Assembly (NCBI RefSeq): GCF_021869535.1 | Contig: NW_026262593.1 | Coordinates: 31,992,001-32,056,000 of the forward strand | From: Mytilus californianus | Taxonomy: Eukaryota | Reading direction: 5' to 3' | Length of the DNA: 64,000 bases | Part shown: positions 52,705 through 64,000 of the stretch, piece by piece | Numbering within the stretch: position 1 is the stretch's first letter | How the letters are laid out: each line of letters opens with the position of its first letter | The notes under the pieces: model-generated | The model's input: only the letters and a program-made list of their open reading frames with translations | Databases searched by the model: none | Told to the model about the DNA's origin: nothing | Position numbers and translations under genes: made by a program

Positions 52705-52912
52705 ATGAGTGATGAAGAAGAAATAGTTGGAAGTGATTTTATAGGATCGGATGATGAAGAGAAATCAGTCGAAGCTCTTGAACTTAAGTTGCAAAAAATC
52801 CTGCAAGAAAAAGAAAAGTTAGAAAAACAGAAGAAAAAAGATGAATTACTGTCAAAAATCAAGCAAGCTGAAGCCGCTCTGTCGAACTTACAGACCTTAG
52901 CTGAACCTTCAA
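52705..52912 (+). CDS. SWIM / 4E-binding-motif gene, coding exon 1 (acidic, coiled-coil; MSDEEEIVG...AEPS)
   Basis: Acceptor ttcacag ending 52700, ATG 52705, donor gtaaga at 52913 (phase 1). Confidence 0.75.
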
Positions 52913-54117
52913 GTAAGATAACAAAAGAAAAAATATATAACAAAAAAAACAACAACCAAAGATCTTTGAGAAATAGACTAAAGTGGTTATTCTGTTTTAG
53001 TTGTTTGTTTTTGCTGCAGCAACCAATCAATACACTGATAACAATTATGAACCTTGATTAAAATAAGTCACTCTGTTTATATTTAAAACACATGTAAGAA
53101 GTTACAGTTAAAACTTCAGTCTGTTCTCTTCATCAGCCAGTACCTAAATATACAGAAAATAAGGTATATCTTTTAGTCGTAAACTAAATTCCAAGACAAT
53201 ATAACACAAACATTGCTTTTGTTAAAATGAACAAACATTACAAGAATATGATATTTTTTATCAAAATTTCCAAAAGGGCTTGGATATGACTATGAGATTT
53301 AAGTGTATTGGTTCACAATGCGAAATAATAATTATCCATTTTGTATGAGTAATGTAAGAACACAAATCATGCAGAATTTCAATTTATAGTTTTTAAAAAT
53401 GTAATAAAAGTCAAAGGTACATATTTTTTTTCTTCATCTAAGCACTTTTGGATTATCTCTTACCACTTCCAAAGTAAAATTTCGATATTCTACGTCCGTT
53501 TTAAATATTCAATATGACTTTGCTATTCAAATAACATTTCCATTTATGAGTAGCAAAAATTTGCATAATATTTGATATTAAAAGATAATTTTTTTCATTA
53601 TTTTATAACTTTTTTATACTTTTAGTATTTCAAGTGTCTTTTAAACTCACCATTTCGACGGTTCGAACTATGTAGCACACAATAATTGAGATTTAAAAAG
53701 TGTGGTTCTTAAGACTGTCTTATCTTAAAGTTATTGCCACTTCTAATGTTGAGATGTGATTTCAGTTCAATTTCCTTTCATGACTATGTCAGAAGATTTT
53801 CTTTTAGGTTGAACATTCTCAAAAGTTCTTATTCATAATACTTCTTTCAAGACAATGTCAAATAAGCTCCAAAGACACTACTGACCAATCCAAATGAGTT
53901 ATGAAAATGCTACATGTATATACTTACAGCATGCACTACATATTTGAAACATATACTGCATGTTATTGGTAATTTTTAACCAAAAGTTTTTTTCTCTTTA
54001 CCAAACATTATTTCATCTGTCTTTATGCACTTTTAGAAACAATAGAAATTTATCAAACAGACACTTCCGAAATCATCATAAAAATAAATGCTTAATCAAG
54101 AAAATGTACAATTGTAG

Positions 54118-54646
54118 AATCTGAAGTCGACTCATGGACAACAGATGAAATAAGGCAGTTCTTTCGAAGAAAAGGAATCATAGTCAAGAACAAACCATTG
54201 GAGCATCTAAGAAAATTGGCAAAGTCTGTAATTGACAGTAAAATCCCTGATCATAAGACAACCGCCCCTTCTGAAATAAGTAAACGAACTATAAATTATA
54301 ACGGAAAAGACCTCACATTTCCAGGTATAAAAGACAAATCGTTATCAAATTGGTCAGATGATATATCATCTTTGCCATCAGTTGATCATGTACAAGCACA
54401 TGCGTACATAATATCGTCTGCTGAGTTCGATCTTGAGCGATTCCGAAATATACAGAAGGAGGATAGCTACTTGTTATATAAAGGAAATGCCATAAAAAAA
54501 TGTAAAGTACATAAACTAGATGAAGGCTTTTGTTATGTTACATGTAATTGTATGTCTAGTAAAAACAGTCAAACGAATTTAGAGGTTGTGTGGACCTTAA
54601 TTCAAAATGATGGATGTATACAGACAGCCGGTTGTTCATGTGATGA
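54118..54646 (+). CDS. SWIM / 4E-binding-motif gene, exon 2 (pre-SWIM module ending in AGCSCD)
   Basis: Acceptor ttgtag (phase 1 match), open frame SEVDSWTTDEIR...WSDDISSLP...TAGCSCD, donor gtaagt at 54647 (phase 2). Confidence 0.85.
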
Positions 54647-56062
54647 GTAAGTTTTTGTTGAAATTGATATTAAAAAAGAGAGGCGGAAGAAACCAAAGGC
54701 ATAGAGTCAAACTCATAAGAGGAAAACGAACCAACAATGCCATTACATATAAAAAAAAAAAACGAAAAAAAAAACGAAAAGACAAACAACAATCTACAAA
54801 CACAACATATAAAAAACTAGAGATTGAGCAACACGAACCCCACTAAAATACGGGGGTGATCTAAAGTGCTCCGGAAGGGTATACACCAGATCCTGCTTCA
54901 CTGGTGTCATCCGTCGTGTTGCGTATGTAAATACAAACCCGATGACTAGTTTAATTTGATATATCACATTCGAGGAAAAGTATGGTGCTTGAATATCATG
55001 AGATGATTAATTATGTAGACGTTCCTACCTTCACTCTGTTTAAGTTTTAATACAATTCCAATACAGAGAGAGATGATACCGAGGCGGCAATCAAATATCA
55101 TAAGTCACAAAAACACAAACTTCACCATTGCAAAACAGAAAAACGTACAAACAAAAAACGACAGTCACCAAAACAATTCACAAAAAAACTAAAGACTGAA
55201 ACTATAAACATTAACCTCACCAAAAACCATATACTCATGTGCCCAAAAAGGGTTAGCAGTTCTTTTCCCAAAAAAGATACCCGTTAGTTTAAATACGTTA
55301 ATGAGTCATAATTGGTAATTAAGCATCATACAGTTGAGGATTAATGAACGTCTCTTCTCTTACCCTAAGCCATTGACAAATGTACAATAGAAGATAATAC
55401 ATACTAGAAATTGTGCAATTAAAACTCCAGGTGATGTTCATATAATGCTTATAAAAGCTGATTATTTGTTGTTTCACGATATACCACAAACGTTGCATTG
55501 TCGACTAGTCAATTCAAATTATTTGTGTAATATCTATATTGAGTAAATTCTGCATACATTATAGGCATATGTGTCTCTAGACATCTGAGTGACATTCGGT
55601 AAAAAAAAAATCTTACTTGAGATAAATTTTAGAAGTAGCAATGTTTTAGAAAATATATACTGGAGAGGCGAAAGATTCCAAAAGGACATTCAAACGCATT
55701 GGTGTGCTATGGTAAAAAATCTTACTGGAGATAAATTTTAGAAGTAGGAGAGGCGAAGGATACCAAACTCATAAGTCGAAAACAAACTGACAATACCATG
55801 GCAAAAAACGAAAATAAAGATAAACAACAGTACATGAAATAAATTACTAAAGAATATCTTATGAATGTAGGAAATTTATGATTTGTTTAAACTTGGATCA
55901 TTTTATTGCCGTATTAATATTATTTATGGGTTATTGTATTCTTTTTAAAAAAGACCAGTATATAATTTGATTAACCTAAATATGTAAAAGCTAAATATGT
56001 ACAGATAAAGTATTAGTTGTGTTAAAAATAATTACTATTTGTTATGTGAATTATTTTGACAG

Positions 56063-56147
56063 GGGTAGTGATTGCTGCATGCATACTATAGCTTTAATGT
56101 TGACCTTAGCATCGTTAAACAAGAGCAATAATTATGCGGCGGATAAG
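56063..56147 (+). CDS. SWIM / 4E-binding-motif gene, exon 3 (EGSDCCMHTIALMLTL...DK), completes CxC-x6-CxH
   Basis: Acceptor tttgacag (phase 2), donor gtaaac at 56148 (phase 0); too short for the ORF track. Confidence 0.8.
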
Positions 56148-57585: not shown

Positions 57586-58137
57586 GTACAGCGAGTTGAT
57601 ATAGGGACTAAACTATATGCAAATCGAAGTTTAACAAATCTACAGCATGGTAAAGACGGCTTCTCTAAGACAAATTATCTAGGAGAGGAAATGAAAGAAT
57701 CACGTCGTAATAAAGTCTATACATATCAATCAGAGGGGAGCGAAGAGGAAGAGGAGGCGGCACCAGAAGTATGGGTACCTCCAACAATGCTAGAAAATAA
57801 ATCAGCTATAGCCGATAGAATCAACGAATCACTCAGCAAGCAAAATGACAGATCAAATCCTTTAAGAAAGTCACACAACAATTATACTTTTCAGCGGTTT
57901 GAACCTAATACTTCTGAGAAAGGTAATTTGGATCCTAATTCTCCAAAGCTCCATATGTTGAATGAAAAAAGCACCGGAGATGCAACATCTATAAATCAAT
58001 TGCAGTCCAAGTTTGAAGCTAGACTGACAAAAAGTCCTATTGAAGTAAAAATTGAAGGTGCAGGGAAATCAAGTGAAATATCTGCACACAATCGAGAAAC
58101 GCAACTAAATTCCAGAATTCTTCACAATATCAAAGAG
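57586..58137 (+). CDS. SWIM / 4E-binding-motif gene, exon 4 (low-complexity, S/E/N/K-rich)
   Basis: Acceptor ttttttgtctcaag, 552 nt open, donor gtattt at 58138, phase 0/0. Confidence 0.8.
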
Positions 58138-58670: not shown

Positions 58671-59510
58671 ATTGAAAAACCACGCAAAGAGTCAACCGAA
58701 CCAAAACCCCTTATTCCATCCAGAGAAAATGTACTTAGTAATCTTAAAGAACAATCCATGAAAAGGGATAGGCAACAAACCGTTGGTAAGATTCCTACTT
58801 TGCAGGAAAATGCACTACATTCAAATACTATTAAAACTACTGGAAACGGTGGAATGATATTTAAAAACGTTCCTCTTAAAAGTGGCGAAATAAATATTTC
58901 ACATAAACCAATGACGAATAGCGAGAATCTACCTGTCAACACATGCATTACTATGCCTACTTCATCAAAGTCTTATCCACATGCAACAAGTATAGAACAA
59001 ACAACTGTCCACATACCAGTCACGCCTTCAGTAAGGTCTCAACTGGGATTTGCAAACAAGTACCCATTGCATGTAACGGATCCTCAACAGAAACCTATCT
59101 CTGGATTGGGTTACCCCATGCAAGTTAACTCAACTGCCGTACCAACAGATGTATCTACATATACGACTGGTCAATTACCTAAACCTTCATCATCATATCT
59201 ATACCCTCAGCAGACTATTGCGTCTACTGTTACCCGAGGGTATAATCCGGTTTACCAACCAACGGTACCTGTACCACTTGTTTACCCAGCAGCACCAGTG
59301 TTATTCCCAGCAGAACAACCACATGTGAATTTCATGTCAAATGTTGCTCCAGTTTCAAATCACAATAAACCTCAAGTGATAATGGATCCGCAACCCGGTT
59401 TGTTTGGTCCTCGTTATCCAACAGCATATCCGTATTCTAGTTCAAATGCTTCTTTTCCGACGCCACTGGTGTATCCTTCCGATGAAACAAGAAGTGTTAA
59501 AAACAAACAA
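58671..59510 (+). CDS. SWIM / 4E-binding-motif gene, exon 5 (P/T/S/Y-rich, likely disordered)
   Basis: Acceptor gaattttcag, 840 nt open, donor gtaagt at 59511, phase 0/0. Confidence 0.85.
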
Positions 59511-60332: not shown

Positions 60333-60504
60333 TCTGTCCATACATTTGATATTGTTGAAACTAATTCTGACGTTCAAAAACCAAAAGTATGCAGAAAAGA
60401 TCGATTCATGACGCCAGCACCAACGTTAGATGAAAATAAAGAGTCCTCAAAACCTTCTCTCTCTGACAGATGTTCGTCAAACACTTCAGTAGCCGCGACG
60501 AAAG
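60333..60504 (+). CDS. SWIM / 4E-binding-motif gene, exon 6 (SVHTFDIVE...AATK)
   Basis: Acceptor tttaatttttag, donor gtacat at 60505 (phase 1). Confidence 0.75.
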
Positions 60505-61750: not shown

Positions 61751-61890
61751 TGCAAAGAATAACCTATGATAGAAAATATCTATTGAGACTCCGGAGGTCT
61801 GTGTTTTCACAACGTAGACCAGATAACATTGATCATATACCAGAAATACAAGTAGTTTCGGTAGTAGGTTTTTTATTGTTTAGAGCTTGA
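61751..61890 (+). CDS. SWIM / 4E-binding-motif gene, exon 7 with 4E-BP-like RITYDRKYLL...IPEI; stop TGA at 61888-61890
   Basis: Acceptor atttttcag (phase 1 match); YxxxxL-phi motif at 61765-61785; an internal donor after IPEIQ with further exons cannot be excluded. Confidence 0.75.
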
Positions 61891-62801
61891 TCTGGGCGTA
61901 GCAGTTATGTGAAGGGTTCATGCTTTAAAAGTTTCCTATTTAATTTATCTATTCAAAACACAATAGAGGGTCTTTCGTGTTGTTCGTTTATTAGGGTGCA
62001 GAGTTTATTCACTTTTAATAGAAAAGAAAGTCGATTACACAATTGAAAAAAAGTGATAACAAATTTTGCATAAAAAACATTAAAACGACAACTGCAACGC
62101 CCAGACATTGTTTTTATTTTGATTCGTCGGATATAGAGACGTTTTATTATTTAAAAAATATATTGAGATCAACAACGTTTTACAAATAAAATCTACGTTT
62201 GAGAATCGACATATATATGCTTTATAACCCTTATTATTTAATGAAATTACAAAATGCATAGTTTTAGATATATAAACAGTCCTATTAAATTCCGTTGATG
62301 ACGTTTGTAGACTATTAAAGCATGTGTCAACATATATTTTTTGCTCCTAATAAAAGTGCCCGGGGAAACTGTTTTATAAACAATGCTATAATATAATTTC
62401 CGTTTGGAAAAAATTAGTCTATGCCCTATATTCCGTAACTGTAATATTTTTGTCAGTGGAAATAATATTCTAAATATTTCTTCCATTTGGAACTAAAATT
62501 ATAAAGCACTTCTATTATATGGGATATAATTTTACATACAAAGATGAACGACGAGATTTAGTTTTAATTTGCGAAGTTAAATACATCACTGAACATTGAA
62601 CCTTTTACCAGAAGGAATGTTATTTTCTCCCTCGCTTCACTCCTCCGAAAATATTTTTTTTCTTAACTATGTATTGAAGAAAAAAACAAAACACAGTGTA
62701 GGAATGTACGTTCACTACAAGATCGCATTTAATATAGTTTCTTACATATCTACATGCAGACATTCATAAATGCATCAAAATTCAAAATACACATGTTAAT
62801 A

Positions 62802-63042: not shown

Positions 63043-64000
63043 ACCACACATGTCGATATGAACTGGGGAAGTAGTATTTATGAAGGTTATTAGTGTGGGT
63101 GGATGGGAAATAGTGTATAAAACTAACTTATATATCGTAACTTTTTTGTAACGAACGTCGCATTGGTCAACCGCGCCTTAAATTTTCCTTATATACTGAC
63201 CCCCGCAATCGTCCGTATAGAAAGGAATTTAAATACGGAAAACAGTTCTTGCAAATCAAGGACCGTAAAGCAAGAAATGTAGTAATAGGTGGAGGTTGTT
63301 CCCTTTAACATTATACAACTCACAATTTACTTTAAATAGATTTATTTTTAATTAACTCAATTATTGGACCCGAATTAGAGAAGAATAATCATTCAAAACT
63401 AGTAAAACACATTGGTTAATAAAGAAAACATTGCACTAGAAAATTAAAGAAACTTAAATGAATCACATAAGTCAAACAATCATGTCGCAAATTGTTTAAA
63501 TAATTATTAATATATTTTAGTATGATGGAACGCCTGTTACATATCGTCCATTTACTTTTACTCCTGGATATGTAAAACGTGCAACGGACATGGTATGTTT
63601 AAAAATGTAGAGGTTACTAATATATATTATACATAATTTCGCATAGAAGATTAATAGTGCTTCAACAAGAGACCCACCCTCTTCAGAATCAATTGAAAAT
63701 TAAAACCACAAGGACGTTTTTGACTTTATCAGTAACTGTTATTAAGTTCGAATAAACTGGAGCGTTTGAAAAACGAATAAAATACACCAACCGAGCGATT
63801 AAATCACCCTATAGAAGGATTCAGCCATGGACATGGGTCAAGTTTGAAATCATACAGTCTTGAAAAGTAACTCAGATTGTTACTGCCATCTTAATCCAAT
63901 TATCTAAAGGACATAACACATCACTTTATAACTAAGAGAAACACAGACAAGGTGCGAGACATGGGAAAGGCATATGAAAATGTGGCTTTATCTAAGTTTA

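What the first reader, a model, noticed from the sequence alone, without database searches (positions are those of the whole stretch)
61751..61890. Bipartite eIF4E-binding segment with exact 4E-BP spacing but without the proline-directed phosphosites
Seen: RITYDRKYLLRLRRSVFSQRRPDNIDHIPEI. Known: human 4E-BP1 reads [31 protein letters not shown], with canonical YxxxxL-phi and a non-canonical IPGV 17 residues later. The same 17-residue spacing occurs here, and the R63 and P72 equivalents are kept. The S65-P site becomes S-V and the T70-P site becomes R-R. Inference: a genuine two-site eIF4E ligand that may escape mTORC1-type release. An FDIVE in exon 6 is only a weak TOS-like match.
Basis: partly seen in the sequence, partly recalled or inferred. 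Interest (0 to 1): 0.8.

Follow-up and report, generated by a model that had tools for sequence, protein, structure and literature searches.

The report
eIF4E-binding exon of eIF4G-like gene
The 4E-BP-like peptide is real and conserved, but it is an internal exon of a mussel-specific paralogue of translation factor eIF4G (an eIF4E-binding motif followed by a MIF4G domain), so the missing 4E-BP phosphosites are the normal eIF4G state; the unusual part is the gene's chimeric build.

Summary
The peptide (V)QRITYDRKYLLRLRRSVFSQRRPDNIDHIPEIQVVS(V) is encoded as described and aligns without gaps to human 4E-BP1. It aligns equally well to human eIF4G1 and to this mussel's own eIF4G. The window is Mytilus californianus. 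The exon is exon 7 of about 15 in RefSeq gene LOC127719907 ("uncharacterized protein", 995-1097 aa), which runs from 52705 to about 7.7 kb past the window's end. Exon 7 is internal, with donors at 61861 and 61864; the supposed C-terminal tail is intron. Downstream lie an FTFTPGYVK block and a MIF4G domain closest to human eIF4GII (E 2e-18). These three blocks, and seven intron positions and phases, match the canonical eIF4G gene on the same chromosome. The motif is therefore eIF4G-derived, not a 4E-BP that lost its phosphosites. It is a conservation island in a fast-evolving disordered region, and Tyr, Leu and the hydrophobic residue are invariant in 14 of 14 family sequences. eIF4E binding is likely but inferred. 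The gene is a chimera: a conserved acidic coiled coil and a transposon-type SAP+SWIM head without its nuclease, about 500 disordered residues, the eIF4G core, and an end right after HEAT-1 (no MA3/W2). I found no paper on it. It is a new variant of a known kind, of moderate interest. The scan's two neighbouring notes (SWIM gene; eIF4G-like gene) describe this same gene.

The parts
61751..61863 (+). Exon 7 of LOC127719907: the eIF4E-binding exon, (V)QRITYDRKYLLRLRRSVFSQRRPDNIDHIPEIQVVS(V). It starts in phase 1 and ends in phase 0.
   Evidence: Searches give the sequence and frame. RefSeq isoforms X5 and X2 match at 100% and splice it to exon 8; 7 synonymous-only and 6 conservative codon changes inside the exon; 6 of 6 codons change non-conservatively from 61870 on.
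61765..61794 (+). Canonical eIF4E-binding motif YDRKYLLRLR (Y-x-R-x-x-L-phi-x-x-R).
   Evidence: gapless alignment to 4E-BP1 and eIF4G1 peptides solved in complex with eIF4E. (extended consensus). (Y, L and phi invariant in the family). (the only predicted helix in the disordered region, RKYLLRLR).
61795..61827 (+). Linker RSVFSQRRPDN. The S65-P equivalent is S-V, the T70-P equivalent is R-R, and the P72 equivalent is kept.
   Evidence: S, S, R and P are invariant in alignment A3. No nucleotide change in three species.
61828..61848 (+). Non-canonical motif region IDHIPEI, aligned with 4E-BP1 LPTIPGV, human eIF4G1 LPHISDV and mussel eIF4G LPDLPDI.
61861..61869 (+). Tandem alternative splice donors GTA|GTA|GGT. 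The donor at 61861 is used in isoform X2 and the donor at 61864 in isoform X5. Only the second (GTAGGT) is conserved in related species.
   Evidence: VVS|YDG versus VVSV|YDG.. (M. galloprovincialis proteins read VVST|L and VVSA|F).
61864..61890 (+). Start of intron 7; this is not a coding tail.
   Evidence: 6 of 6 codons changed non-conservatively from 61870. (absent from the RefSeq proteins).
63521..63592 (+). Exon 8, YDGTPVTYRPFTFTPGYVKRATDM. It carries the FxFTPGYVK block shared with canonical eIF4G (FDFTPGYVK) and is a cassette exon, skipped in M. edulis isoform X2.
60333..60504 (+). Exon 6 (SVHTFDIVETNSD...SVAATK). It is disordered and poorly conserved, and it ends in phase 1, joining exon 7 in frame.
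58671..59510 (+). Exon 5, a 280-aa Pro/Tyr/Ser-rich disordered region.
57586..58137 (+). Exon 4, disordered region. Isoform X5 includes only part of it.
54117..54647 (+). Exon 2: SAP-like helix pair and the first part of the SWIM zinc finger.
   Evidence: (weak Ish1/HeH-like match). (SAP+SWIM clusters).
56058..56147 (+). Exon 3: the rest of the SWIM finger (CC.H helix).
   Evidence: (SWIM 13-17 bits in relatives, below the cutoff of 19.6).
52705..52911 (+). Exon 1: start codon and an acidic/coiled-coil N-terminus (MSDEEEIVGSDF...). This is the most conserved part of the protein.
   Evidence: identity 0.91.

Best explanation
The segment is the eIF4E-binding region of a lineage-specific paralogue of eIF4G, gene LOC127719907 of Mytilus californianus. 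Shown: exon 7 is internal. It is followed by an FTFTPGYVK exon and six exons encoding a complete eIF4G-type MIF4G (HEAT-1) domain, after which the protein stops. This core descends from eIF4G by DNA-level duplication, since the block order and the intron positions and phases are the same. It is fused to an unrelated N-terminus: an acidic coiled coil, a SAP+SWIM head of the kind found on SAP-SWIM-YqaJ nuclease proteins, and about 500 disordered residues. [quoted passage not shown] The linker turns at the conserved S..S.R.P residues, and IDHIPEI packs on eIF4E's lateral surface, as in solved eIF4G and 4E-BP complexes. This tethers cap-bound eIF4E to the MIF4G domain, the usual eIF4A/RNA-binding platform, and gives an alternative minimal eIF4F-like scaffold. 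Binding would be regulated by competition with the mussel's phospho-regulated 4E-BP, not by phosphorylation of the motif itself. Lacking MA3/W2 and the post-HEAT-1 linker, the complex may be specialised rather than a general initiation factor. Odds: eIF4G-derived identity about 0.9; eIF4E binding about 0.75; activator rather than repressor is open.
For: The peptide and its frame are confirmed.. Spliced mRNA contigs of two relatives carry the whole ORF and end right after MIF4G. MIF4G scores 31.3-42.1 bits against a cutoff of 30.8. The nearest PDB sequences are human eIF4GII (E 2.2e-18) and eIF4G1 (8.9e-15), with DAP5 at only 5e-4. The AF2 model has a confident helical-repeat domain whose top Foldseek hits are eIF4GII and eIF4G1 HEAT-1. 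Canonical eIF4G at C13:20.22 Mb has the same three collinear blocks. Seven intron positions and phases are identical or within one codon: the motif exon's 3' end, the FTPGYVK exon's 3' end, and five in the MIF4G region. Tyr, Leu and phi are invariant in 14 of 14 sequences, and Q, I, T, Y, D, L, L, S, S, R, P, E and I are invariant in 8 of 8. The motif's identity is 0.74-0.79 against 0.49 for the disordered region and 0.30-0.46 for its flanks. The codon pattern indicates purifying selection. The motif fits the extended consensus that eIF4G and 4E-BPs share. The locus is single-copy in this genome.
Against: No binding data exist, and I could not run a complex prediction because every eIF4E gene here is split into short exons. 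Transcription here rests on RefSeq models, on relatives' mRNA contigs, and on RNA-like runs holding about the exonic share of words. The motif sequence alone is equally similar to the mussel's 4E-BP and to its eIF4G (BLOSUM62 50 versus 50). The exon's 5' boundary (phase 1, five codons before Tyr) coincides with 4E-BP exon 2, not with eIF4G's (same phase, 13 codons before Tyr). The MIF4G is only marginally above Pfam's cutoff in Mytilus, and I did not examine its eIF4A-binding residues.
Confidence: 0.8

Rival explanations
1. The identity is the same (an eIF4G-derived motif), but the protein works as a large 4E-BP-type competitor or repressor. It would hold eIF4E, and perhaps eIF4A, on particular mRNAs or sites chosen by the SAP+SWIM head. 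It could not recruit the 43S complex, because everything after HEAT-1 is missing.
For: The protein stops at the last MIF4G helix. Canonical eIF4G continues with MA3 exons scoring 37.5 and 24.9 bits. The N-terminus has no similarity to the canonical eIF4G locus and instead carries a SAP+SWIM module. Large eIF4E-binding proteins with extra domains, such as Mextli, are known (PMC4573856, listed).
Against: From general knowledge, yeast and trypanosomatid eIF4Gs support initiation with a MIF4G as their only HEAT domain. The MIF4G is the best conserved folded part (0.84), which argues that it has a partner of its own. Nothing computed here speaks to the direction of the effect.
Confidence: 0.3
2. 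One reading: a 4E-BP-derived C-terminal tail, a 4E-BP exon 2 captured by a SWIM gene, that acts as a non-phosphorylatable 4E-BP.
For: The Pfam eIF_4EBP profile is the best Pfam match to the exon (23.9 bits). The best PDB hit is 4E-BP1. The 5' intron position and phase are identical to exon 2 of the mussel's own 4E-BP gene.
Against: The exon is internal, not terminal. In the whole protein the profile match drops to 19.5 bits, below the cutoff of 24. The exon is followed by eIF4G-specific blocks that share introns with canonical eIF4G, including the exon's own 3' boundary, which differs from 4E-BP exon 2. The family's motifs score equal or higher against mussel eIF4G than against mussel 4E-BP in 6 of 7 members.
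Confidence: 0.04
3. The motif is an inherited relic that no longer binds eIF4E. On this view the protein uses only its MIF4G and SAP/SWIM parts.
For: There are no binding data. The Φ+1..+3 residues and the linker differ from both 4E-BP and eIF4G. One relative has Val at the variable position 4 and Gln at position 9.
Against: The motif is a sharp conservation island in a fast-evolving disordered region. All contact-defining residues are invariant even in the 52%-identical relative, which reads YDKKFLL...HIPEI. The substitution pattern is synonymous or conservative.
Confidence: 0.08

Closest known systems
Canonical metazoan eIF4G (human eIF4G1/eIF4G3; the mussel's own gene at G000 C13:20.22 Mb)
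   Same: Both have a bipartite eIF4E-binding region with identical spacing, an FxFTPGYVK block and a MIF4G/HEAT-1 domain, in the same order. Seven intron positions and phases are shared. The MIF4G is closest to eIF4GII and eIF4G1 by sequence and by fold.
   Different: This gene has no MA3 or W2 domain and no post-HEAT-1 linker, because the protein ends at the last MIF4G helix. Its N-terminal 800 residues are unrelated to the canonical locus and carry an acidic coiled coil and a SAP+SWIM module. The region between MIF4G helices is shorter. MIF4G identity to human eIF4G is only about 20-24%.
4E-BP1/2/3 and Thor (Pfam PF05456)
   Same: The canonical YxRxxLΦxxR helix, the linker length and the IPxΦ non-canonical motif are shared. 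The R63, S65 and P72 equivalents are kept. The 5' exon boundary has the same position and phase as the mussel's 4E-BP exon 2.
   Different: This is a protein of about 1000 aa, not about 115. It has no RAIP motif, no TPGG sites, no S-P or T-P sites and no C-terminal TOS. The profile match covers only positions 46-82 and is below the cutoff in the full protein. The motif is followed by a MIF4G domain.
MIF4G-only eIF4Gs (yeast eIF4G, trypanosomatid EIF4G1-5)
   Same: The domain logic is the same: an eIF4E-binding motif upstream of a single HEAT/MIF4G domain, with no MA3/W2. The yeast eIF4G-eIF4A complex and T. cruzi EIF4G5 MIF4G appear among the fold hits.
   Different: They are not close relatives. 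This gene is a secondary truncation of a metazoan-type eIF4G, as its shared introns with the canonical mussel gene show, and it has a SAP+SWIM head.
Mextli (Drosophila and C. elegans)
   Same: It is a large eIF4E-binding protein that combines a MIF4G-like domain, a nucleic-acid-binding domain and a bipartite eIF4E-binding region (PMC4573856, seen).
   Different: In Mextli the order is MIF4G-KH-4E-BM, from my own knowledge. Here the 4E-BM precedes the MIF4G as in eIF4G, and I found no sequence relationship to Mextli.
SAP-SWIM-YqaJ/alkaline-exonuclease proteins of molluscs, cnidarians and arthropods
   Same: Residues 60-285 resemble their SAP+SWIM front end (feature score 0.95; structural TM 0.75 by the query).
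   Different: The nuclease domain is absent here and is replaced by a disordered region plus the eIF4G core. This relationship is only a lead: Pfam SWIM and SAP matches are below their cutoffs, and my own model of the module was poor (pLDDT 51).

Membership tests
4E-BP (Pfam PF05456, eIF_4EBP) | A whole-protein match to the family profile above the gathering score (24 bits), covering most of the 117 positions. | tested here: not met
   The exon alone scores 23.9 bits over profile positions 48-80. The full proteins score 19.5, 19.6, 17.8, 18.8 and 22.6 bits, over positions 46-85 only. The genome's real 4E-BP scores 59.4 + 55.7 bits.
4E-BP (Pfam PF05456, eIF_4EBP) | A small protein of about 100-120 aa, intrinsically disordered, with the motif at its centre. 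| tested here: not met
   The protein is 995-1097 aa and has a folded MIF4G domain.
4E-BP (Pfam PF05456, eIF_4EBP) | Proline-directed mTORC1 phosphosites (T37/T46 TPGG, S65-P, T70-P). | tested here: not met
   The equivalents are S-V and R-R. There is no profile match upstream of position 46. Only the distant relative P0017 has S-P at the S65 equivalent.
4E-BP (Pfam PF05456, eIF_4EBP) | An N-terminal RAIP motif and a C-terminal TOS (FEMDI-type) motif. | tested here: not met
   FDIVE lies upstream of the motif, its Phe is Met in a related species, and the segment is missing from M. edulis isoform X3. The protein's C-terminus is a MIF4G helix.
4E-BP (Pfam PF05456, eIF_4EBP) | A canonical YxxxxLΦ motif plus a non-canonical motif at 4E-BP spacing. 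| tested here: met
   The alignment to 4E-BP1 residues 51-81 is gapless. The feature is shared with eIF4G, so it is not diagnostic.
eIF4G family | An eIF4E-binding region (canonical + non-canonical) N-terminal to the MIF4G domain. | tested here: met
   The motif lies about 95 residues before the MIF4G. It aligns without gaps to human eIF4G1 (5T46) and to mussel eIF4G.
eIF4G family | A MIF4G/HEAT-1 domain of the eIF4G type. | tested here: met
   PF02854 scores 31.3-42.1 bits against a cutoff of 30.8. 1HU3 eIF4GII scores E 2.2e-18 and eIF4G1 8.9e-15. The top Foldseek hits are eIF4GII and eIF4G1 HEAT-1.
eIF4G family | Common descent with the canonical eIF4G gene, shown by collinear blocks and shared intron positions. 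| tested here: met
   There are three collinear blocks. Seven intron positions and phases are identical or within one codon.
eIF4G family | MA3 (HEAT-2) and W2 (HEAT-3) domains, as in metazoan eIF4G. | tested here: not met
   The protein and the relatives' mRNAs end right after the MIF4G. The canonical gene has MA3 exons. This feature is absent from fungal, plant and trypanosomatid eIF4Gs, so its absence makes the protein an atypical member rather than a non-member.
eIF4G family | An N-terminal PABP-binding region. | tested here: inconclusive
   Residues 1-796 have no similarity to the 40 kb of the canonical locus that I held. I did not map the canonical N-terminal exons completely.
eIF4G family | Physical binding of eIF4E and eIF4A. 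| not testable with these tools
   The eIF4E genes are split into short exons, so no admissible contiguous sequence existed for complex prediction. I did not map the eIF4A-contact residues.

The most novel reading that the evidence does not exclude
Mussels have built and kept, in several paralogues, a chimeric cap-complex scaffold. In it a transposon-type SAP+SWIM nucleic-acid/protein-binding head and a long disordered region replace eIF4G's PABP-binding N-terminus, and everything after HEAT-1 is deleted. This would make a minimal eIF4E-eIF4A adaptor that brings the cap-binding machinery to targets chosen by the SWIM/SAP head. Those targets could include transposon or viral nucleic acids, and the adaptor could serve selective translation or selective silencing.
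Probability: 0.4. Interest if true: 0.6.

Novelty: new variant of a known kind. Interest (0 to 1): 0.4.

Why it matters
For the finding as posed, it matters little: an eIF4G paralogue carrying an eIF4E-binding motif without 4E-BP phosphosites is expected, and the gene is already modelled in RefSeq, though unnamed. The gene itself is more interesting. It is an expressed, conserved, multi-copy Mytilus family that joins a mobile-element-type SAP+SWIM head to the eIF4E- and eIF4A-binding core of eIF4G and drops the ribosome-recruiting C-terminus. It would be a natural 'minimal eIF4G' for testing which eIF4G functions need only the 4E-BM plus HEAT-1. It is also an example of translation-factor diversification by domain capture in a group of animals known for gene presence/absence variation. 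The result also merges two first-stage notes (the SWIM/4E-BP-like gene and the hidden eIF4G-like gene) into a single gene.

Tried and rejected
2. Pfam on the single downstream exons and a genome-wide MIF4G scan did not detect the MIF4G. It appears only in the spliced proteins.
3. The word-based protein search with exon 5 found only one genomic fragment. The exhaustive search was needed to find full-length relatives.
4. The idea that the exon was captured from a 4E-BP gene, because its 5' intron position and phase match 4E-BP exon 2, was rejected on the downstream eIF4G blocks and shared introns. The 5' coincidence remains unexplained.
5. TOS reading of FDIVE: rejected.
6. The donor CAA|GTAGTT at 61852 was rejected. 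The VVS codons show synonymous changes, and the RefSeq proteins include them.
7. The structure model of the SAP+SWIM module had a mean pLDDT of 51, too poor for a fold search.
8. Complex prediction was not run, because no admissible contiguous eIF4E sequence was available.
9. Paper searches found no description of a SWIM-eIF4G chimera or of this family. The library is partial, so this is not proof of absence.

Full report
**Observation.** The + strand from 61753 translates to QRITYDRKYLLRLRRSVFSQRRPDNIDHIPEIQVVSVVGFLLFRA*, directly after a ttttcag acceptor, so the exon starts at 61751 in phase 1. phmmer against PDB chains aligns it without gaps to human 4E-BP1 residues 51-81 (17.8 bits, E 0.027). 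Pfam eIF_4EBP matches profile positions 48-80 at 23.9 bits against a cutoff of 24. The same PDB search also aligns human eIF4G1 (5T46) without gaps (13.9 bits). This genome's canonical eIF4G reads KKLYDREFLLQLQFSQESTAKPKDLPDLPDIILD with the same spacing. Anchored on the Tyr, the exon scores BLOSUM62 50 against the mussel's 4E-BP and 50 against the mussel's eIF4G, and 0 of 20000 shuffles reach either score. The literature states this, together with the extended consensus YX(R/K)X2LΦX2(R/K), which YDRKYLLRLR fits (PMC6061780).

**Which gene it belongs to.** The window is G000 C13:31992001-32056000. Exons 4 (57586-58137), 5 (58671-59510), 6 (60333-60504) and 7 join in frame through canonical splice sites. 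An earlier scan note placed an 'eIF4G-like' gene just past the window's end, so I fetched the downstream DNA. An exhaustive protein search with exon 5 returned Mytilus edulis XP_071146277 (1053 aa) and a M. coruscus protein of 1577 aa. Both contain the N-terminus of window exon 1, a SWIM-like region, a long disordered stretch, the motif AQRITYDRKFLMRLRKSVFSQRRPD.IDH.PEIQ, and about 95 residues later a MIF4G domain above Pfam's cutoff (31.6 and 34.3 bits against 30.8). A further search found M. californianus LOC127719907 isoforms X5 (995 aa) and X2 (1097 aa) on a contig of 74,791,930 bases, the length of C13. They match the window's exons at about 100%, so they are this gene's RefSeq models. 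tblastn lays out about 15 exons from 52705 to about 71680 in window numbering. The first-stage notes on a 'SWIM/4E-BP-tail gene' and on a 'hidden eIF4G-like gene' therefore describe one gene.

**Exon 7 is internal.** Isoform X5 reads ...IPEIQVVSV|YDGTPVTY..., using the donor at 61864. Isoform X2 reads ...IQVVS|YDGTPVTY..., using the donor at 61861. These are tandem donors GTA|GTA|GGT. Orthologous exons from two related mussels (Logan contigs L012 and L013) were aligned to the window. Within 61753-61863, 7 codons carry only synonymous changes and 6 carry conservative replacements. GTAGGT at 61864-61869 is invariant. From 61870 on, 6 of 6 codons change non-conservatively. Two intron-free contigs of 3570 and 3798 nt carry complete ORFs of relatives with UTRs and end right after the MIF4G. 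Because the gene spans about 19 kb, these are spliced mRNAs.

**The exon is eIF4G-derived, not 4E-BP-derived.** The MIF4G part hits human eIF4GII (1HU3) at E 2.2e-18 and eIF4G1 at 8.9e-15, but DAP5 only at 5e-4. An AlphaFold model built on the family alignment gives a confident helical-repeat domain (pLDDT 75-92). Its best Foldseek matches are eIF4GII and eIF4G1 HEAT-1 and the yeast eIF4G-eIF4A complex. The canonical eIF4G gene on the same chromosome has the same three blocks in the same order: the 4E-binding motif, FDFTPGYVK (FTFTPGYVK here), then MIF4G. The intron positions and phases coincide at seven places:
- the motif exon ends at Tyr+31, phase 0 (LDN| versus VVS|);
- the FTPGYVK exon ends five residues after YVK, phase 0;
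- |ELYKKA versus |EIMRKA;
- VFEK| versus VVDT|;
- |IKVPS versus |AKVQS;
- a phase-2 split of the Arg before FIGELF versus FTGIIA;
- KAK|PRVDQY versus TSA|NYLDQY.

The absence of S65/T70-type sites is therefore the ancestral eIF4G state. One loose end remains. The exon's 5' boundary (phase 1, five codons before Tyr) is identical to that of exon 2 of the mussel's own 4E-BP gene. In canonical eIF4G the same-phase intron lies 13 codons before Tyr.

**Evidence that the motif is functional.** In 14 family sequences the Tyr, Leu and Φ positions are invariant. Across eight full C-terminal regions, including a relative only 52-56% identical, Q, I, T, Y, D, L, L, S, S, R, P, E and I of the motif region are invariant. 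Along the protein, identity is 0.74-0.79 in the motif. It is 0.30-0.46 in the flanking segments and 0.49 over the whole disordered region. In the model the only helix in the 100 disordered residues before the MIF4G is RKYLLRLR, as expected for a motif that folds on eIF4E. Binding itself is inferred. All three eIF4E loci are split into short exons, so no admissible sequence existed for a complex prediction.

**What is unusual.** Canonical mussel eIF4G continues with MA3 exons (37.5 and 24.9 bits). This paralogue stops at the last MIF4G helix. Its first 796 residues have no similarity to the canonical locus. Residues 60-285 instead resemble the SAP+SWIM front end of SAP-SWIM-YqaJ/alkaline-exonuclease proteins, which are common in molluscs, cnidarians and arthropods, but without the nuclease (feature score 0.95, structural TM 0.75). 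Pfam SWIM and SAP matches are below their cutoffs, and my own model of the module was poor, so this is a lead only. The family has several members in Mytilus: three M. edulis isoforms, two M. coruscus genes on one contig, and two M. galloprovincialis proteins, one named 'translation initiation factor 4G, partial'. It also has a more distant transcript-derived relative. I found no paper describing it.

**Mechanism and verdict.** The most likely reading is a bipartite eIF4G-type eIF4E-binding region that links cap-bound eIF4E to a HEAT-1/MIF4G platform in a truncated, chimeric eIF4G paralogue. Access to eIF4E would be controlled by competition with the mussel's bona fide 4E-BP, which keeps its S-P sites (CRNSPLTRSPPP). 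Whether the complex activates or represses translation is open. I rate it a new variant of a known kind, of moderate interest.

Noticed in passing
window 61861-61869: There are tandem alternative 5' splice sites three bases apart (GTA|GTA|GGT). They add or remove one Val between the eIF4E-binding region and exon 8. Only the second donor exists in the two related species examined.
   Followed up: partly
window 61891-61925: An intronic block of about 35 nt just after exon 7 (TCTGGGCGTAGCAGTTATGTGAAGGGTTCATG) is about 90% conserved in three species, while the neighbouring intron is not. It may be a splicing regulatory element. The in-frame stop at 61888 is also kept in position in all three.
   Followed up: no
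window 61797-61852: Across 56 nt of exon 7 (18 codons, SVFSQRRPDNIDHIPEIQ) there is a single synonymous difference among three species, whereas the first 45 nt of the exon carry more than 10 differences. This suggests an extra constraint, at the RNA level or very strong protein constraint, on the linker and non-canonical part.
   Followed up: no
window 63521-63592 (exon 8): The exon carrying the FTFTPGYVK block is a cassette: M. edulis isoform X2 (P0006) skips it (EIQINSAMAPVTDKP). The block is shared with canonical eIF4G (FDFTPGYVK at C13:20221408). From memory it resembles the DFTPSF stretch of human eIF4G1. I do not know its function.
   Followed up: partly
P0017 residues 859-896 (locus L024): The most distant family member reads RRSPFSKRKPD-LAHIPEI. 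It has an S-P at the 4E-BP S65 equivalent and a linker one residue shorter, so a proline-directed site exists in at least one lineage of this family.
   Followed up: no
window 52705-52911 (exon 1): The acidic/coiled-coil N-terminus (MSDEEEIVGSDFIGSDDEEK...KQKKKDELLSKIKQAEAA) is the most conserved part of the whole protein (identity 0.91-0.95), more conserved than the MIF4G. No family match was found for it.
   Followed up: no
P0005 (M. coruscus, 1577 aa), residues ~800-1200: One M. coruscus paralogue has expanded its disordered region with many tandem Ser/Pro-rich repeats of about 30 aa (...SSLHSGTYPTAMFLPPDSSSNAS...). Two paralogues lie on the same 382,806-base contig.
   Followed up: no
window ~62321-62395: A repeat of about 74 nt in intron 7 has dozens of copies across the genome at 80-88% identity, including a tandem array at C13:64983773-64984972 with a period of about 160 nt.
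   Followed up: no
I did not examine them further or send them to any search.
   Followed up: no
G000 C143:106174307-106176710 (L006, L007): This is the mussel's bona fide 4E-BP gene. Exon 2 reads (G)TKIFYERNFLMQCRNSPLTRSPPPNMAKIPGVTCPGE, with both S-P sites retained. It is the likely physiological competitor of the motif studied here.
   Followed up: partly
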